The translations under genes and the position numbers were made by a program. The notes below the pieces were generated by a model. It was not told the origin of the DNA and did not search any database. It saw only the letters and a list, made by a program, of their open reading frames with translations. A stretch of DNA of 63,788 nt, the filler included, from Octopus bimaculoides (lineage: Eukaryota), in the NCBI RefSeq assembly GCF_001194135.2. It is 7 parts of 7 records of this genome, joined end to end, with 100 filler letters (N's around TTAATTAATTAA, not from the genome) between each part and the next. Parts side by side here need not be neighbours in the genome. Positions count along the whole stretch, not along the records: positions 45,602 to 51,999 come from NW_026349690.1; 6 more parts are not named here. One strand, 5' to 3'. Shown here one piece after another: positions 45,790-51,901 of this stretch (the first letter of the stretch is position 1; the number at the start of each line of letters is the position of its first letter).

Positions 45790-45861
45790 AGTTTTGTTAA
45801 ACTGGAAAGATTTCGGAATGTTTCTACCTCGATTTCCTGGAGGTTATTATCACCCAAATTC
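45790..45861 (-). CDS. LRR exon A (most 3' visible); 72 nt; NLGDNNLQEIEVETFRNLSSLTK(L)
   Basis: attatttttgacag|G AAT TTG GGT GAT AAT ... ACA AAA CT|gtaagt. 72 nt, open, phase 2; also visible at the end of ORF 45786..46139. Confidence 0.88.
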
Positions 45862-47069
45862 CTGTCAAAAATAATTGAGTTAAGTAGAATTTGTAAAGAA
45901 CGAACTTTTGATGAAAAAAACGAACCAGCAGAATTCAGGAGAAACGTGATGTGATAGTAATTAGAGACGAGAGACTGAAAAAACTTAAAAATTTGGGAAA
46001 ATGTGAAGTAAGCGGAGGATAATAAAAAGAGGGCGGAAAAGTCGTAGAAAGGCTGGTGGGGTTGGAGTAGAAGGAAGACAAAGAGAAAAGTGCTGAGGAA
46101 AGGAAACAAATACAAGAAGAGGGCAGAACCAAGAAGCAAAATTTTAACAGGTCGGTGGGAAACAGGAATACGAAATTGAATGAAATTTGACAGAACCTAA
46201 AAGTAAGGAGGATGCGGAGAAAATAAAGAATAAGATGGCAATATTGAAGCAGAGTAAAAATACACAGTAGTATTAAAGGAAATGAAAGGAATATTAAAGA
46301 AAGATAATAAAGAGAAGCAGAAGAAAAAGTAGAAAAGGAGGAGAGCAACAACAACGACAACAATAACAACACAAACAACAGCAAGAAAGCATAAGAAGAG
46401 GAAAAAGAGGAAAAAGCAAAAAAAAAAAAAAANNNNNNNNNNAAAAAAAAAAAAAAAAGAAGAAGGTAAAGAAGAAGAACGGCAACAACAACAAATGAAA
46501 GAAAAGATCAAAGAAAGAATGGAGGAAAATATTAGAAAGAAAAGAAAGCAGAAGAAAAGAAGGGAAAGTAGAAGAAAGGAGCGGAAGAAAAAGGTACGAG
46601 TAGCAGAAGTAGAAGGATGAGGAGGAGGAGGAGAAGAAAGGGGAGAAATTCTGTAAAAATTTGATTGCGTAAAATATATTCATATTAATTATGTACTCTT
46701 AAAATATGCAAATACAAAGGAGAGTTACGTATGATAATTATCATTGATCAAGAGATAAACACAGTAAATGATATACAGATAGAAACAGAAACACAAATCG
46801 ATACACACTTATAGATTCACTCATACAAAGACACAAATATATATTCACATGCATACACAAACTATCATACAGTCCTATACACATTTATATTCATACCAAT
46901 CACAGACACACATATTTACAGACGTTCACAAGCAATCACACATTTCTATCGAAAAAGAGTGAGACTGTAAAGAGCCACAAGAACGGGACGTGAAACAAAA
47001 TGGAGAGATTATAAATAGTTAGTAATATAATGCCATTGAAATATTATCAACAAGATTTATCTGGCTTAC

Positions 47070-47141
47070 AGATATGTTAACATGGACAGATCATCGAATG
47101 TTCCAACGTGAATTTTGTTGAGTTTATTTTTATTCAAATAT
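47070..47141 (-). CDS. LRR exon B; 72 nt; YLNKNKLNKIHVGTFDDLSMLTY(L)
   Basis: tattttattttacag|A TAT TTG AAT AAA AAT ... ACA TAT CT|gtaagc. 72 nt, open, phase 2, LRR consensus. Confidence 0.88.
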
Positions 47142-47677
47142 CTGTAAAATAAAATATTAGTTGATATGACAACGTAGAGAGGAACATTATGGTAAAATAT
47201 ATCATTATCAGTGAAATGTTTACAAAATAAGATAATGAGAAGTGTTTTCTGATAAGCTGTAAAATATTGTTAAACAATTACGTGATGTAGGAGAAAGAAA
47301 ATGGATGAGAATGATGATTATAATATTGAGAATGAGGGAATGAAGTTGAGGAGAAGGATGGTGATGGAGGTGGTCGTGGTGGTGTGGGTGAATATAAGGC
47401 AGAGGCTGTGGATAGGAGGATGGTGGTAGGATTGATGGAGTTGATGTTGTTGCTAATGATGATGATGAAGAAGAAGAGGAGACAAAAGATGAAAGAAGAA
47501 GAATTGATTCAAGAATAATGTAGTGACACTGTTTATGTTTAACGAAAAGATTCCTCAACCGATTTACAAGTATTAAAATTTATAGGTATTTAGAGATTAA
47601 AAGAAAGTATGGGGCCACATTACATATTCAGCAGTTTAGCGTCTATTAAGTAATACAAAAACACTGACTGAACTTAC

Positions 47678-47749
47678 AATGTTGTTACACTGGAAAGATT
47701 TTGGAATGTTTCTGCTTTGATTTCCTTGAGTTCGTTACGTTCCAAACTC
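47678..47749 (-). CDS. LRR exon C; 72 nt; SLERNELKEIKAETFQNLSSVTT(L)
   Basis: aattttgacag|G AGT TTG GAA CGT AAC ... ACA ACA TT|gtaagt. 72 nt, open, phase 2, LRR consensus. Confidence 0.88.
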
Positions 47750-49669
47750 CTGTCAAAATTAATGGATTTAAGTAGAATTTATAACGACCTGATTCTTTAT
47801 GCAAAACAGAAGATCAAACAGAATTAAAGAAAAACGTGATGTGAAAAAAATTAGAGGCGACAGAGAGCAAAACGTTTAAAATTTGAAACAAGCTGGTGAA
47901 GTAAGAGGGGGGACAATCAAAAGAGGAGGGAAAAGTCATAGATGGACAGGTGGGTTTAGAATAGGAGAAGAAAGAGAAAGCCGAGGAAAATTATCACGGT
48001 AGTAATTCCCCTTTCGATTTTTAGACTTTTTTATTAGTATAATATTTATTTCGAAATGTTCTTAAAAATACATCAAGCTGCGACTAGATAGTTAATTACG
48101 ACATATAACACCCATTTTTGTCTTTAAATATTTAACCTATTATTTACAAAAAAAGTTAAAATTAAAAATTTTATGAACCAGAAATTATTCCCAAATAGTA
48201 GTACCAGCTTACAAAAAGTCTTATGCCCTAACTTGTTTCTGCTGTCTTCTTCTGTCTGTGTCCTTCCCTCAGCCTTCTTCTCTTTGTTCTCCTTCTACTC
48301 CAACCCCCTGCCCTTCTACGACTTTTCTGTCCTCTTTTTATTCTCCTACTCTTACTTTACCTTTTCCCAAATTTTGAACATTTTCAATCTCTTGTCTCTA
48401 ATTATTATCACATTACGTTAAGTAAAAATTAAATATGAATTTGAAAATATAACTTATAACTCCATATTTTGTAATTCACAGCGAACATACAAATACAGCT
48501 TGACTATTAAAAAAAACCTCAGGCGTTTTTTAATAGAGATACATATTGGATTTCATAAAGAGGATGTCAGATTTAATATGACATATATTAACACCTACTT
48601 CCTATATGTGTTTTAGTCAAGATTCAAATACAAGTGACTGGAAGATCGGATATATTAATCCCATAAAATGATAACCAAGAAAAAATCTTATGTACTTTAA
48701 ACGTCTTCTTCTAGTTTTTTCTATTAACTTCTGAGGAGTACATGTATGACTATTACGATTTTACATTTATGAATATCTGAGTCCATTTGTATGAAATAAT
48801 TGTATAGGAATGCGAAAAATACAAACCATAATCCATTTGAACATCAAATCTCCTTCATTACATAAATATGAATTAATTAATCGAACTTGTTTAATAAGTT
48901 CAGTCATATATTGATTATTTCAATACAAGCTTTTTATACCTAAACGAATTGCATTAAAAAATTCGAAAGTAAAGTATGAAGGAAAAACATTAGAAATCAT
49001 AGGAAAAAATTCCAATTAAAGGACGAATTTACATTCATCCGATAAAGTATATATAAAGTGTATATAATATAATATATATACATATATAGACACACAAAAC
49101 ACAAACAGGGGGAGAAACAGCGAGAGAGAAGCAAAGAGAGATGTAAACAAATATATGTACAAATTATGAGGGCTGGCACTACACCAATATTACCGTGAAC
49201 GTTCAGTGATACACACTCAGACACACCAACAGCCAGAAGAATATTAGAATGATTTGGGAAGCGATTTAGAAACAGAAGAATGAGAGTATTTAATTAATAG
49301 TCGTAATTCTTTTAAGCGCATAAAGTAGAAAAAGATGAATGACCACAAAAGTAGAAGAAGAAGAAGAAGAAGAAGAAGAAGAAGAAGAAGAAGANNNNNN
49401 NNNNNNNNNNNNNNNNNNNNNNNNNNNNNNNNNNNNNNNNNNNNNNNNNNNNNNNNNNNNNNNNNNNNNNNNNNNNNNNNNNNNNNNNNNNNNNNNNNNN
49501 NNNNNNNNNNNNNNNNNNNNNNNNNNNNNNNNNNNNNNNNNNNNNNNNNNNNNNNNNNNNNNNNNNNNNNNNNNNNNNNNNNNNNNNNNNNNNNNNNNNN
49601 NNNNNNNNNNNNNNNNNNNNNNNNNNNNNNNNNNNNNNNNNNNNNNNNNNNNNNNNNNNNNNNNNNNNN

Positions 49670-50375: not shown

Positions 50376-50447
50376 ATATATTCTAAACTGGACAGATTTC
50401 GGAAGGTGCCTGTTTTGATTTCCTTGATATCATTATAACTCAAGTAC
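50376..50447 (-). CDS. LRR exon E; 72 nt; YLSYNDIKEIKTGTFRNLSSLEY(M/I)
   Basis: ttttatgttccag|G TAC TTG AGT ... GAA TAT AT|gtatgt. 72 nt, open, phase 2; 63/72 nt identical to exon F. Confidence 0.88.
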
Positions 50448-50549
50448 CTGGAACATAAAATTGAGACAATAAGAAATTATATTAAGCATATTTGTGATTG
50501 AATTTTTGCTAAATAATTAGATGATGGAATTAATCACGATGATGAATAA

Positions 50550-51300
50550 CACGGGTCATCAACAAAAAATTTTGAAATGGCGTCGAGACACTAAACATAT
50601 TTTTTAGCTAATTTGAGGGCACTGAATCTGAAAATAACCTTACTTTTTCTTGGTTAACCACCGTTTCTGCTGTACAGAAATGCCTCATTTTGGGGAAAAA
50701 AATCATTTTTTTCATTCGTTTTCTGTATATTTGATATTGAATAATGGCAATATTTCTCAAAGTAATATCGTAAAAACCTCTCAATTCGTATTGAAGCCAA
50801 CAAATATTGGTCTGTTTATTGAGAAATACTACTTTTGCAATAAGAATCAGATCCTGAGTCGTTAAACATAATATGATTAGATATACCAAGACCAACAAGT
50901 ATTTTCATCAAATAATTAAATAAACTAACATCGAGAAATAAAACCTTCATGAACTTAAGAACTATGGTAAAAAAAGTTCCTCTTTCTTGATTGTCTGTCA
51001 TATTCAATGTTGTTTAAGTCAGCCATCATTCGTTTGTCTCACCGTCCTTGGTAGCGCTCTTCCATAATTTTGATATCCCGATGGAATTGTTCTCGTTTCT
51101 CATCACTCACATCACCGCGATTAACCGGAAATTCATTTAGATGGCTATGTAAAAAGTGAACCTTAATACTCATATTAGCGCCTATTTGTTATAGACTTTT
51201 TAACAGCTTTTCCACTAATTCCTTGTAGTTTTCGGGCCGGCGATTGCCTACGAAGTTTCCCCCCACATCAACAAACACGTAATTCCAAGTCATTCATTGA
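50550..51300 (-). mobile_element. Chapaev3-like (CMC superfamily) DNA transposon 3' fragment inside the LRR intron F-E
   Basis: NFVGNRRPENYKELVEKLLKSL*QIGANMSIKVHFLHSHLNEFPVNRGDVSDEKREQFHRDIKIMEERYQGR*DKRMMAD. The terminus CACGGG is preceded by TAA, consistent with CAC termini and TWA target sites (family name from recall). Confidence 0.7.
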
Positions 51301-51829
51301 AGAAGAAGAAAACAAGAACAAGAAGAAACAGAAGTAGTGATAGGAGAAAGGTCTAGAATGGTAATCAGTGGTGTTGGAGATGGAAACAACGTACACGATA
51401 TATAGACCGAGTTACACATACATTCTGGTATATCCGCATGCACCACACACCCATACACAAACAGTGAAACATATATATACACATAAACAAGTTTGCCATA
51501 TTTTCTCTCCTAATTCTCATGCACTTATATTCCGAATCTGAAGGTTGTGCACTCACTCACATTCACAAACAATAAAACACCTTTTGGACAAAGATTTTAC
51601 ACATACACACAGACATACACATGCATGCAGCAAATGGATACCTTGAACTATCACGTTCTCATATATGCCATGTCATAGAAATGGGCACACACTCACTCAT
51701 ACAGATTTACAGACAATAAAACATATCTTTGGAGAGACAGGTGAGAAAGCTTAAAATGAAAGATGGGAAGATGATAGATTTAGAAGTATATTGTGAATGA
51801 CATATTAAAAAAATACTGATTCAACTTAC

Positions 51830-51901
51830 AGATGTGTTAAACTGGACTGACTTCGGAAGGTGCCTGCTTTGATATCCTTGATATCATTATAACTCAAGTA
51901 T
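51830..51901 (-). CDS. LRR exon F (most 5' visible exon of an extracellular-type LRR protein gene); 72 nt; YLSYNDIKDIKAGTFRSQSSLTH(L)
   Basis: Minus strand: ttttacgttccag|A TAC TTG AGT TAT AAT ... ACA CAT CT|gtaagt. Exactly 72 nt, open frame, phase-2 ends, fits the typical 24-aa LRR consensus LxxLxLxxNxIxxIxxxxF. Confidence 0.88.

What the first reader, a model, noticed from the sequence alone, without database searches (positions are those of the whole stretch)
45790..51901. Hidden array of modular one-exon-one-LRR cassettes (six 72-nt, phase-2 symmetric exons)
Seen: five intact and one disabled exon on the minus strand, each exactly 72 nt with AG/GT boundaries, and mostly invisible in the ORF track. 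Spliced F-E-C-B-A reads YLSYNDIKDIKAGTFRSQSSLTHL YLSYNDIKEIKTGTFRNLSSLEYM SLERNELKEIKAETFQNLSSVTTL YLNKNKLNKIHVGTFDDLSMLTYL NLGDNNLQEIEVETFRNLSSLTKL. Established: 72-nt phase-2 LRR exons occur in LGR/RXFP/GRL101-type receptors and Slit-like genes, so the architecture itself is not new. Inference: every exon has the same length and phase, so any can be skipped, duplicated or swapped in frame. Together with recent duplication and amino-acid-biased divergence (separate findings), this could be a diversifying LRR receptor (immune or chemosensory) varied by copy number or alternative splicing. It could also be an ordinary LRR-GPCR ectodomain; I cannot name the gene.
Basis: partly seen in the sequence, partly recalled or inferred. 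Interest (0 to 1): 0.8.

Follow-up and report, generated by a model that had tools for sequence, protein, structure and literature searches.

The report
Octopus one-exon-per-LRR cassette array
This is part of an octopus gene in which each 24-residue leucine-rich repeat has its own 72-base exon; the layout is real but already known elsewhere, and the gene most likely encodes the outer, ligand-binding part of a cell-surface receptor family that has multiplied in octopuses.

Summary
Five minus-strand exons (F, E, C, B, A) are confirmed. Each is exactly 72 nt, AG/GT-bounded and phase 2, and each encodes one canonical 24-residue LRR. The spliced peptide hits Pfam LRR_8 at E=2.8e-50. The sixth, "disabled" exon is only 43 nt readable, has one in-frame TAA, and runs into the 304-N gap. 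Its length, its donor and the E-to-C adjacency are therefore unverifiable.

The array grew by tandem duplication of exon-plus-intron units: F/E about 81% and C/A about 75% intron identity. LRR scaffold residues are conserved. The variable positions diverge at about the intron rate, so positive selection cannot be shown.

No database protein contains these exons. The nearest relatives (54% identity) are Octopus sinensis and O. bimaculoides "LRRC4-like" models built from the same cassettes. In O. sinensis, isoforms X1 to X3 differ by skipping exactly one cassette.

In one more distant O. bimaculoides family member, the signal-peptide/LRRNT/LRR model is followed on the same strand by a HormR-GPS-7tm_2 model. 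This points to the published octopus-specific adhesion-GPCR expansion, not to an LGR or Slit gene.

Verdict: a new member of a known kind. The modular architecture is right; the immune or diversifying role is untested.

The parts
51830..51901 (-). Exon F: 72-nt phase-2 LRR cassette (YLSYNDIKDIKAGTFRSQSSLTH+L). It has Q at the normally hydrophobic scaffold position 18.
50376..50447 (-). Exon E: 72-nt phase-2 LRR cassette (YLSYNDIKEIKTGTFRNLSSLEY+M). Its donor is GTATGT. It is a recent duplicate of F (63/72 identical).
49699..49741 (-). Relic exon D. It has a B-type acceptor. The 43 readable nt read HFNHNILQ*ISFPT, with TAA at 49716-49714. The rest is lost in the assembly gap.
   Evidence: 49765-49725 ~ 47165-47125, 85%; 25/43 identical to exon B; acceptor 22/24
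49395..49698 (.). Assembly gap (304 N). It truncates exon D and separates the F-E contig from the C-B contig. It could hide the end of D or further cassettes.
47678..47749 (-). Exon C: 72-nt phase-2 LRR cassette (SLERNELKEIKAETFQNLSSVTT+L).
47070..47141 (-). Exon B: 72-nt phase-2 LRR cassette (YLNKNKLNKIHVGTFDDLSMLTY+L). This is the 'GTFDDL' type, conserved with cassette 2 of the O. sinensis relative (83% nt identity).
45790..45861 (-). Exon A: 72-nt phase-2 LRR cassette (NLGDNNLQEIEVETFRNLSSLTK+L). It is a duplicate of C (56/72 identical).
51483..51979 (-). Duplication unit around F (exon plus about 80 nt upstream and 350 nt downstream). It is homologous to 50023-50529 around E, with 80% identity over 509 nt.
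45701..46101 (-). Duplication unit around A. It is homologous to 47592-47989 around C, with 74% identity over 407 nt. The E-downstream intron (50008-49764) likewise matches the C-downstream intron (47471-47227), so the ancestral repeat was a two-exon unit: E,D / C,B / A...
48232..48419 (-). Inverted copy of the intron segment that lies about 82 nt upstream of exon A (45943-46133; 84% complementary) and, more weakly, upstream of exon C (47832-47978; 76%). It could form a long pre-mRNA duplex that loops out exons C and B.
46433..46442 (.). 10-N assembly gap inside the B-A intron, between two long T runs. No exon or real frame is affected.

Best explanation
The piece is an internal segment of the leucine-rich-repeat ectodomain region of a gene from an octopus-lineage family. 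Family members start with a conserved exon encoding a signal peptide and LRRNT, followed by a variable number of 72-nt exons that each encode one LRR.

Shown:
- Each cassette supplies one turn of the LRR solenoid. The exon boundary falls inside the LxxL|xLxxN strand.
- Every exon starts with A or G and ends with CT, AT or TT, so any exon-exon join restores a hydrophobic L, M or I.
- The array was built by tandem duplication of exon-plus-intron units.
- The LRR scaffold is kept by selection, while the surface positions drift at about the intron rate.

Inferred:
- The array length changes by cassette birth and death. D is a dying copy.
- In mature mRNAs the array length also changes by in-frame cassette skipping, as annotated for the O. 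sinensis relative.
- The full protein is most likely an adhesion GPCR of LRR-HormR-GAIN/GPS-7TM type (ADGRA-like). That would place it in the octopus-specific 'group 3' adhesion-GPCR expansion, with the LRR arc as the adhesion or ligand-binding module.
For: - Exon anatomy and splice signals.
- LRR identity: Pfam LRR_8 E=2.8e-50. PDB sequence matches to IGFALS, TLR3, LRRC15 and LGR4/5 ectodomains reach E down to 7e-60.
- Duplication units that include intron sequence.
- Scaffold retention: positions L2, N5, L7, I10, F15, L18 and L21 would survive random substitution only 1-9% of the time at the observed divergence, yet they are kept in E, C, B and A. There are no indels in any exon, against 14-15 gap columns in the aligned introns.
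- Family: the closest proteins are O. sinensis and O. bimaculoides 'LRRC4-like' models (54% identity). Their loci L001, L002 and L003 consist of the same 72-nt phase-2 exons with the same flank motifs (tttatNttNcag ... gtaagtt). L001 and L002 share intron homology with the window at 70-80% over 170-500 nt.
- The first exon (signal peptide plus LRRNT) is conserved across six family models.
- Cassette skipping: P0001, P0002 and P0005 differ by one cassette each.
- Independent local duplications in each locus.
- Adhesion-GPCR link, from locus L003. The P0014 model (signal peptide, LRRNT, LRRs) is followed 4.6 kb downstream on the same strand, across N gaps, by a model with GPS and 7tm_2. That model has an HRM-like segment (E=1e-4) and no signal peptide; it starts MQNINNVL.
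- PMC6408891 reports an octopus-specific adhesion-GPCR expansion with LRRs in 5 of 22 members, expressed mainly in axial nerve cord, suckers and skin.
Against: - The window holds only 6.4 kb. No first exon, LRRCT, HormR, GPS or 7TM of this gene can be seen.
- The adhesion-GPCR link rests on one more distant family member: P0014 is 37% identical, with no nucleotide similarity to the window. It also rests on the assumption that two adjacent gene models there are one gene.
- The closer relatives L001 and L002 end at a contig end or in gaps, without showing any downstream domain.
- No annotated protein or transcript-derived protein in the database contains the window's exons, so expression is unproven.
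- Overall, the exons diverge almost as fast as the introns. F has lost a scaffold leucine and D carries a stop. Part of the array may be decaying.
Confidence: 0.55

Rival explanations
1. It encodes a small secreted LRR-only protein (signal peptide, LRRNT, a handful of LRRs, no membrane anchor), as the database models of its closest relatives literally say.
For: P0001, P0003 (157 aa), P0006 (86 aa) and the 181-aa L002 model all consist only of signal peptide/LRRNT and/or LRR cassettes. LRR-only proteins are common in molluscs (own knowledge, not tested here).
Against: All these models end '...L' immediately after a cassette. This is because reading through the GTAAG donor gives CT|G TAA. In L001 a further intact cassette (36018-36089) lies beyond the model's end and the contig then stops. 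In L002 the models are broken at N gaps. None has an LRRCT cap. These look like truncated models, not true termini.
Confidence: 0.15
2. The segment is a decaying, non-functional duplicate array: a pseudogene or dead part of a gene. Its exons merely have not yet been destroyed.
For: Exon identity is close to intron identity (87.5 vs 81%; 77.8 vs 73-75%). pN is near the intron divergence. D has a stop and F has Q at scaffold position 18. There is no matching protein or transcript in the database. The introns hold a transposon fragment and an inverted duplication.
Against: Five of five readable full cassettes keep the exact length, the frame, both splice sites and (in four of five) every scaffold residue. 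This holds after 12-40% nucleotide divergence from each other. The joint probability under random change is well below 1%. Exon B is still 83% identical to its counterpart in the O. sinensis locus.
Confidence: 0.15
3. One reading: a diversifying recognition receptor (immune or chemosensory). Its binding surface would be varied on purpose by regulated cassette choice and copy-number change, in the manner of arthropod Dscam or brown-alga ROCO/LRR genes.
For: The cassettes are fully interchangeable in frame. Single-cassette-skipping isoforms are annotated in the nearest relative. Each paralogous locus has its own duplications. The highest amino-acid variability falls at positions 1, 3, 4, 6 and 8, on the concave-face strand. 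An inverted repeat could loop out C+B. A precedent with the same 72-bp phase-2 design exists in brown algae (PMC11378527).
Against: No excess of nonsynonymous change over the neutral proxy was found. Variability on the concave face is a property of all LRR proteins. The isoforms are predicted models for another gene. The inverted repeat is not found in the related loci. There is no expression or polymorphism data for this gene.
Confidence: 0.1
4. It is the ectodomain of an ordinary conserved LRR gene: an LGR/RXFP/GRL101-type rhodopsin-class receptor, a Slit, or a true LRRC4/NGL orthologue.
For: 72-nt phase-2 LRR exons are classic for gonadotropin/LGR receptors (stated in PMC11378527). LGR4/5 ectodomains are among the good PDB sequence matches. 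NCBI names the relatives 'LRRC4-like'.
Against: The sequence matches are generic to all extracellular 24-residue LRRs: IGFALS and TLR3 score higher than LGR. The relatives form a lineage-restricted family with a private signal-peptide/LRRNT exon, found only in Octopus among the hits. The one visible downstream receptor module is 7tm_2 with GPS and HRM, not 7tm_1 or LDLa, and not EGF/LamG or Ig-TM.
Confidence: 0.04

Closest known systems
Octopus-specific 'group 3' adhesion GPCR expansion (Ritschard et al. 2019, PMC6408891); vertebrate ADGRA2/ADGRA3 (GPR124/GPR125) as the architectural analogue
   Same: N-terminal LRRs on a GPS/7tm_2 receptor. The family is lineage-specific and tandemly expanded in Octopus. 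A family member (L003) shows signal peptide-LRRNT-LRRs followed by HormR-like, GPS and 7tm_2.
   Different: For the window's own gene no HormR, GAIN or 7TM is visible. The paper does not describe the one-exon-per-LRR cassette design or cassette skipping. An Ig domain and LRRCT, as found in ADGRA2/3 (own knowledge), were not seen.
Glycoprotein-hormone receptor / LGR LRR exons
   Same: One LRR per exon of about 72 nt, with all introns in phase 2. This was long interpreted as growth by duplication of a prototype exon (as summarised in PMC11378527).
   Different: Those are conserved single-copy genes with a fixed exon number and a rhodopsin-class 7TM. Here the array differs between paralogues, contains recent duplicates and a relic, and the family's visible 7TM is class B (adhesion).
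Brown-alga ROCO (LRR-ROC-COR) genes with shuffled LRR exons (Zambounis et al. 2012; Teng et al. 2024, PMC11378527)
   Same: Each LRR sits on a 72-bp phase-2 exon. There is intense tandem exon duplication, alternative splicing produces different LRR combinations, and variable residues lie on the binding face.
   Different: Those are cytoplasmic GTPases in a different kingdom, with a different LRR consensus. The similarity is convergent design, not homology.
Mouse and human Slit genes (modular 72-bp LRR exons; recalled from Little et al. 2002, not found in the held library)
   Same: Individual LRRs sit on in-phase 72-bp exons, with the noted potential for in-frame alternative splicing. A Mytilus 'SLIT3'-named small LRR protein is a weak hit.
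   Different: Slit has four capped LRR blocks plus EGF, LamG and CTCK domains and is a conserved orthologue. None of that is seen here.
Lamprey/hagfish variable lymphocyte receptors
   Same: 24-residue LRR cassettes are used as interchangeable modules between LRRNT and LRRCT. VLRs appear among the profile hits at 33-36% identity.
   Different: VLR diversity arises by somatic gene-conversion-like assembly from intronless flanking cassettes. Here the cassettes are ordinary spliced exons in germline order, with no sign of somatic assembly.

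Membership tests
Extracellular 'typical' 24-residue LRR domain | Tandem repeats matching LxxLxLxxNxLxxLxxxxFxxLxx | tested here: met
   Pfam LRR_8 E=2.8e-50, four stretches. PDB chains IGFALS, TLR3, LRRC15 and LGR4/5 match at E 1e-36 to 7e-60. 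Conservation at positions 2, 5, 7, 10, 15, 18 and 21 across 22 cassettes.
One-exon-one-LRR phase-2 cassette genes (architectural class) | Each repeat on its own exon of 72 nt, with flanking introns in the same phase | tested here: met
   Five exons, each 72 nt, with AG/GT boundaries, reading 1+69+2. The same design is seen in L001, L002 and L003.
Octopus signal-peptide/LRRNT + LRR-cassette family ('LRRC4-like' models P0001, P0003, P0006, P0013, P0014, P0053) | Cassette exons and flanking intron sequence homologous to family loci | tested here: met
   Exon-plus-flank matches at 70-80% identity over 170-500 nt to L001 and L002. W_B is 83% identical to L001 cassette 2.
Octopus signal-peptide/LRRNT + LRR-cassette family | Conserved first exon MF.Q.KLTFVLIL...LESHA.SDIC.IC.C...IDC (signal peptide + LRRNT) | not testable with these tools
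   The exon lies outside the 6.4-kb piece. It is conserved in six family models.
Adhesion GPCR (class B2; ADGRA-like) | GAIN/GPS autoproteolysis domain and 7tm_2 on the same polypeptide as the LRRs | not testable with these tools
   Not in the piece. In relative L003 a GPS+7tm_2 model lies 4.6 kb downstream of the LRR model on the same strand, separated by N gaps. The models are not shown to be joined.
Adhesion GPCR (class B2; ADGRA-like) | Hormone-receptor (HRM) domain between LRRs and GAIN | tested here: inconclusive
   A hand-spliced L003 segment hits PF02793 at E=1e-4 with 23.1 bits, below the 26.2-bit cut-off. This is for the relative, not for the window's gene.
LGR/RXFP/GRL101 receptors | LDLa module and/or rhodopsin-class 7tm_1 after the LRRs | tested here: not met
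   Nothing of the kind was found in the piece or in L001-L004. The only 7TM seen in the family is 7tm_2.
LRRC4 / netrin-G ligand | LRRNT, 9 LRRs, LRRCT, Ig C2, TM and PDZ-binding tail; 1:1 orthology to vertebrate LRRC4 | tested here: inconclusive
   The name comes only from NCBI's automatic naming. Human LRRC4 (3zyi) is a weaker match (E=8e-27) than many other LRR proteins. No Ig or TM was seen.
Variable lymphocyte receptor-type somatic diversification | An incomplete germline gene flanked by intronless donor cassettes that are copied in somatically | tested here: not met
   All cassettes carry canonical acceptor and donor sites and lie in one orientation as ordinary exons.

The most novel reading that the evidence does not exclude
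The octopus-specific LRR/adhesion-GPCR family may use its interchangeable 72-nt cassettes as a splicing-based diversity generator. In this gene, a 190-nt 'docking' arm (48419-48232) could pair alternatively with matching 'selector' arms about 82 nt upstream of exon C or exon A. That choice would decide whether cassettes C+B are included or looped out. The result would be a Dscam-like competing-RNA-structure mechanism applied to an LRR ectodomain in a cephalopod nervous or sensory receptor.
Probability: 0.06. Interest if true: 0.75.

Novelty: new member of a known kind. Interest (0 to 1): 0.3.

Why it matters
If the inference holds, the LRR ectodomains of an octopus-specific adhesion-GPCR expansion are built from freely interchangeable exons. 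That expansion is reported as expressed in axial nerve cord, suckers and skin. The exons are being duplicated, lost and (in a relative) skipped one at a time.

This would give a concrete, testable route by which the family varies the length and surface of its binding arc. The variation could occur between paralogues, between species and possibly between transcripts.

It also shows that current octopus gene models for this family are systematically truncated. Read-through of the GTAAG donor gives Leu-stop, and assembly gaps split the genes. Counts and domain tables for this expansion are therefore likely to be underestimates.

The architecture itself is textbook, so the finding is mainly of annotation and family-level interest.

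Tried and rejected
- Looked for a sixth full exon with blastn-short, an nhmmer profile and an LRR regular expression on both strands. Only the truncated relic at 49741 turned up.
- Exhaustive HMMER search of 1.84 billion representatives with the family profile. The top 150 hits were swamped by giant generic LRR proteins. Three hits with N-terminal matches were LRR/Ig or LRR-only proteins and were uninformative.
- Context look-ups for P0003, P0053 and a 149-aa window ORF were not on record.
- The non-LRR tail of P0013 first looked like a linker or HormR. It gives no HRM hit, and part of it (ISNQISQPPPSTS) is read from DNA that is dense in retrotransposon ORFs. I treat it as a model artefact.
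- Searched L001, L002 and L003 for HormR/GAIN segments and for long upstream ORFs that could be a neighbour's 7TM. Only transposon-like ORFs were found. L004 was not available to the script.
- Tested for positive selection with Nei-Gojobori counts against intron divergence. There is no excess and too few sites.
- Asked whether the inverted repeat is a family feature. It is absent from L002 and L003, and only microsatellite pairs appear in L001.
- Rfam and tRNA scans of the piece found nothing.
- Pfam on the transposon-like frame in the F-E intron found nothing.
- A literature check for the Slit 72-bp exon paper found nothing in the held library.

Full report
**What is in the sequence**

On the minus strand of 45602-51999 there are five exons of exactly 72 nt:
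- F 51901-51830
- E 50447-50376
- C 47749-47678
- B 47141-47070
- A 45861-45790

Each is preceded by a pyrimidine tract and AG. Each is followed by GT: GTAAGT four times, and GTATGT after E. Each reads as one base completing a codon, 23 codons, and two bases of the next codon, so every flanking intron is in phase 2.

A profile built from the five exons finds only these five places in the piece (E 1e-19 to 5e-25). The spliced 120-residue peptide matches Pfam LRR_8 at E=2.8e-50. It also matches solved ectodomains of IGFALS, TLR3, LRRC15 and LGR4/5. The core observation is real and far beyond chance.

All exons begin with A or G and end with CT, AT or TT. Any join therefore yields Leu, Met or Ile at the first scaffold position of the next repeat. 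The cassettes really are interchangeable in frame.

**The gaps and the sixth exon**

The 10-N gap (46433-46442) lies in the B-A intron between two long T runs. It is 627 nt from exon B and 571 nt from exon A, and it touches no real reading frame.

The 304-N gap (49395-49698) matters more. The only candidate for the 'disabled' exon starts at 49741, behind an acceptor that matches exon B's in 22 of 24 bases. It reads HFNHNILQ*ISFPT, which keeps the LRR scaffold, with a TAA at 49716-49714 where exon B has AAA. It becomes unreadable after 43 nt.

- Its length and donor cannot be checked.
- Its single nonsense change lies 16 nt from a gap edge.
- F-E and C-B-A lie on different contigs.

**How the array arose**

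Self-comparison shows duplication of exon-plus-intron units:
- the F unit matches the E unit at 80% over 509 nt;
- the C unit matches the A unit at 74% over 407 nt;
- the intron after E matches the intron after C;
- the D acceptor matches the B acceptor.

The older repeat was therefore a two-exon unit (E,D / C,B / A...), and F is a later extra copy of E.

Exons are only slightly more similar than their introns: 87.5 vs 81% for F/E, and 77.8 vs 73-75% for C/A. F/E has 7 nonsynonymous and 0 synonymous differences. However, pN (0.13 for F/E; 0.23 for C/A) stays at or below intron divergence, and the site numbers are tiny.

Simulation shows that scaffold residues would survive this much random change only 1-9% of the time. 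They are nevertheless intact in E, C, B and A. No exon has an indel, while the introns have many.

My reading is purifying selection on the fold and near-neutral drift on surface positions. No case for positive selection can be made from this piece. F carries Q at scaffold position 18 and D carries a stop, so some turnover is under way.

**Relatives**

No protein in the 5.8-billion-cluster database contains these exons. The nearest, at 54% identity, are Octopus sinensis 'LRRC4-like' isoforms X1, X2 and X3. Then come other O. sinensis and O. bimaculoides models that share a conserved first exon encoding a signal peptide and LRRNT.

Their loci are L001 (O. sinensis), and L002 and L003 (O. bimaculoides chromosome CM046629.1). 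All are built from the same 72-nt phase-2 exons with the same flank motifs. L001 and L002 share intron homology with the window at 70-80%, so this is common descent, not convergence.

Isoforms X2 and X3 each lack exactly one cassette of X1: the exons at L001 17471-17542 and 26535-26606. This is annotated evidence of in-frame cassette skipping in the family.

Comparing 22 cassettes gives two results:
- one conserved type, the 'GTFDDL' cassette, where window exon B is 83% identical to L001 cassette 2;
- many nearest neighbours within the same locus, which indicates independent local duplications in each paralogue.

The models all end '...L' right after a cassette. Reading through the GTAAG donor gives CT|G TAA, and further cassettes or gaps follow. 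These models are therefore truncated.

**What the whole protein probably is**

In L003 the signal-peptide/LRRNT/LRR model (P0014) is followed 4.6 kb downstream on the same strand by a second model. The two are separated by N gaps.
- The second model has GPS and 7tm_2.
- It begins without a signal peptide, as MQNINNVL.
- It contains a hormone-receptor-like segment: PF02793, E=1e-4, just under the curated cut-off, on a hand-made splice.

The simplest reading is one gene of LRR-HormR-GAIN/GPS-7TM type, which is an adhesion GPCR of ADGRA-like design. This fits the octopus-specific 'group 3' adhesion-GPCR expansion of Ritschard et al. 2019. In that group, 5 of 22 members showed LRRs, and expression was highest in axial nerve cord, suckers and skin (PMC6408891).

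The step from L003 to the window's gene is an inference through family membership. P0014 is only 37% identical to the window's peptide. The closer loci end before any downstream domain could be seen.

I found no support for an LGR/RXFP/GRL101, Slit or true LRRC4 identity.

**Comparison with what is known**

One-exon-one-LRR arrays of 72 nt in phase 2 are known in two settings:
- They are classic for gonadotropin/LGR receptors.
- They have been described in brown-alga ROCO genes, together with exon shuffling and alternative splicing as a proposed diversity mechanism (PMC11378527).

From memory, the same modularity was noted for Slit genes. I could not find that paper in the library.

The architecture and the idea are therefore not new. 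What seems undescribed is that this octopus family is built this way, is in active cassette turnover, and has annotated single-cassette-skipping isoforms.

**Side observation**

A 190-nt intron segment (48419-48232) is the reverse complement of two other segments:
- the one about 82 nt upstream of exon A (84% complementary; duplex -229.5 kcal/mol, against -91.6±7 for shuffles);
- more weakly, the one upstream of exon C (76%).

Pairing with the A arm would loop out C+B, which total 144 nt and stay in frame. This could influence splicing, circular-RNA formation or A-to-I editing. It is not found in the related loci, so it may be no more than an inverted partial duplication.

**Verdict**

The modular interpretation is right and gains some support from a relative's isoforms. 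The immune or diversifying role is untested, and the selection argument does not hold up. The most likely identity is part of the LRR ectodomain of an octopus-expanded, probably adhesion-GPCR, family. This is a new member of a known kind, of modest interest.

Noticed in passing
window 48232-48419 vs 45943-46133 and 47832-47978: A long inverted repeat lies within the pre-mRNA. One arm sits in the intron upstream of exon C. Its partners lie about 82 nt upstream of exon A (84% complementary) and of exon C (76%). Pairing with the A arm would loop out exons C and B in frame. It could serve as a splicing, circRNA or ADAR substrate, or it could simply be an inverted partial duplication.
   Followed up: partly
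window 50955-51293 (minus strand, F-E intron): A single reading frame with two stops (TAA, TGA) reads ...NYKELVEKLLKSL*QIGANMSIKVHFLHSHLNEFPVNRGDVSDEKREQFHRDIKIMEERYQGR*DKRMMADL... From memory it resembles the C-terminal part of an uncharacterised transposon-derived ORF common in animal genomes. It has no Pfam match. It is a decayed insertion in the sense orientation.
   Followed up: partly
all cassette exons in window, L001, L002, L003: Most cassettes end CT|GTAAG, so failure to splice gives Leu-stop at once. All five short database models examined (P0001, P0002, P0003, P0005, P0006) and the 181-aa L002 model end '...L' directly after a cassette. This looks like systematic truncation of gene models, although it could also reflect real intron-terminated transcripts.
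   Followed up: partly
window 49349-49394 and 46405-46470: Both assembly gaps sit in low-complexity DNA. One is a (CTT)15 microsatellite at the edge of the 304-N gap. The other is a pair of T runs of about 16 and 15 bases on either side of the 10-N gap. The introns in general are rich in CTT/CAT-type pyrimidine tracts.
   Followed up: yes
L001 33563-33613, 34051-34101, 34658-34699 and 36018-36089: The O. sinensis relative holds three partial cassette fragments and one further intact cassette beyond the end of its annotated model. The intact one lies 32 nt from the contig end. Cassette birth and death is visible there too.
   Followed up: partly
L003 18980-19225 (+ strand): Between the LRR model and the GPS/7tm_2 model, an open frame reads ...CSTHSRCLEAMGKTLACNQWTNDASCVRCCTGNLCNKDD... 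It has the CCxxxLCN signature that I recall from Ly6/uPAR three-finger domains. It may be an exon of the same receptor or of another gene.
   Followed up: no
L004 34000-43700: The 31-kb span of the O. sinensis P0013 gene is full of reverse-transcriptase-like and transposase-like ORFs. Part of the model's non-LRR C-terminal tail is read from this DNA, so the tail is probably an annotation artefact.
   Followed up: partly
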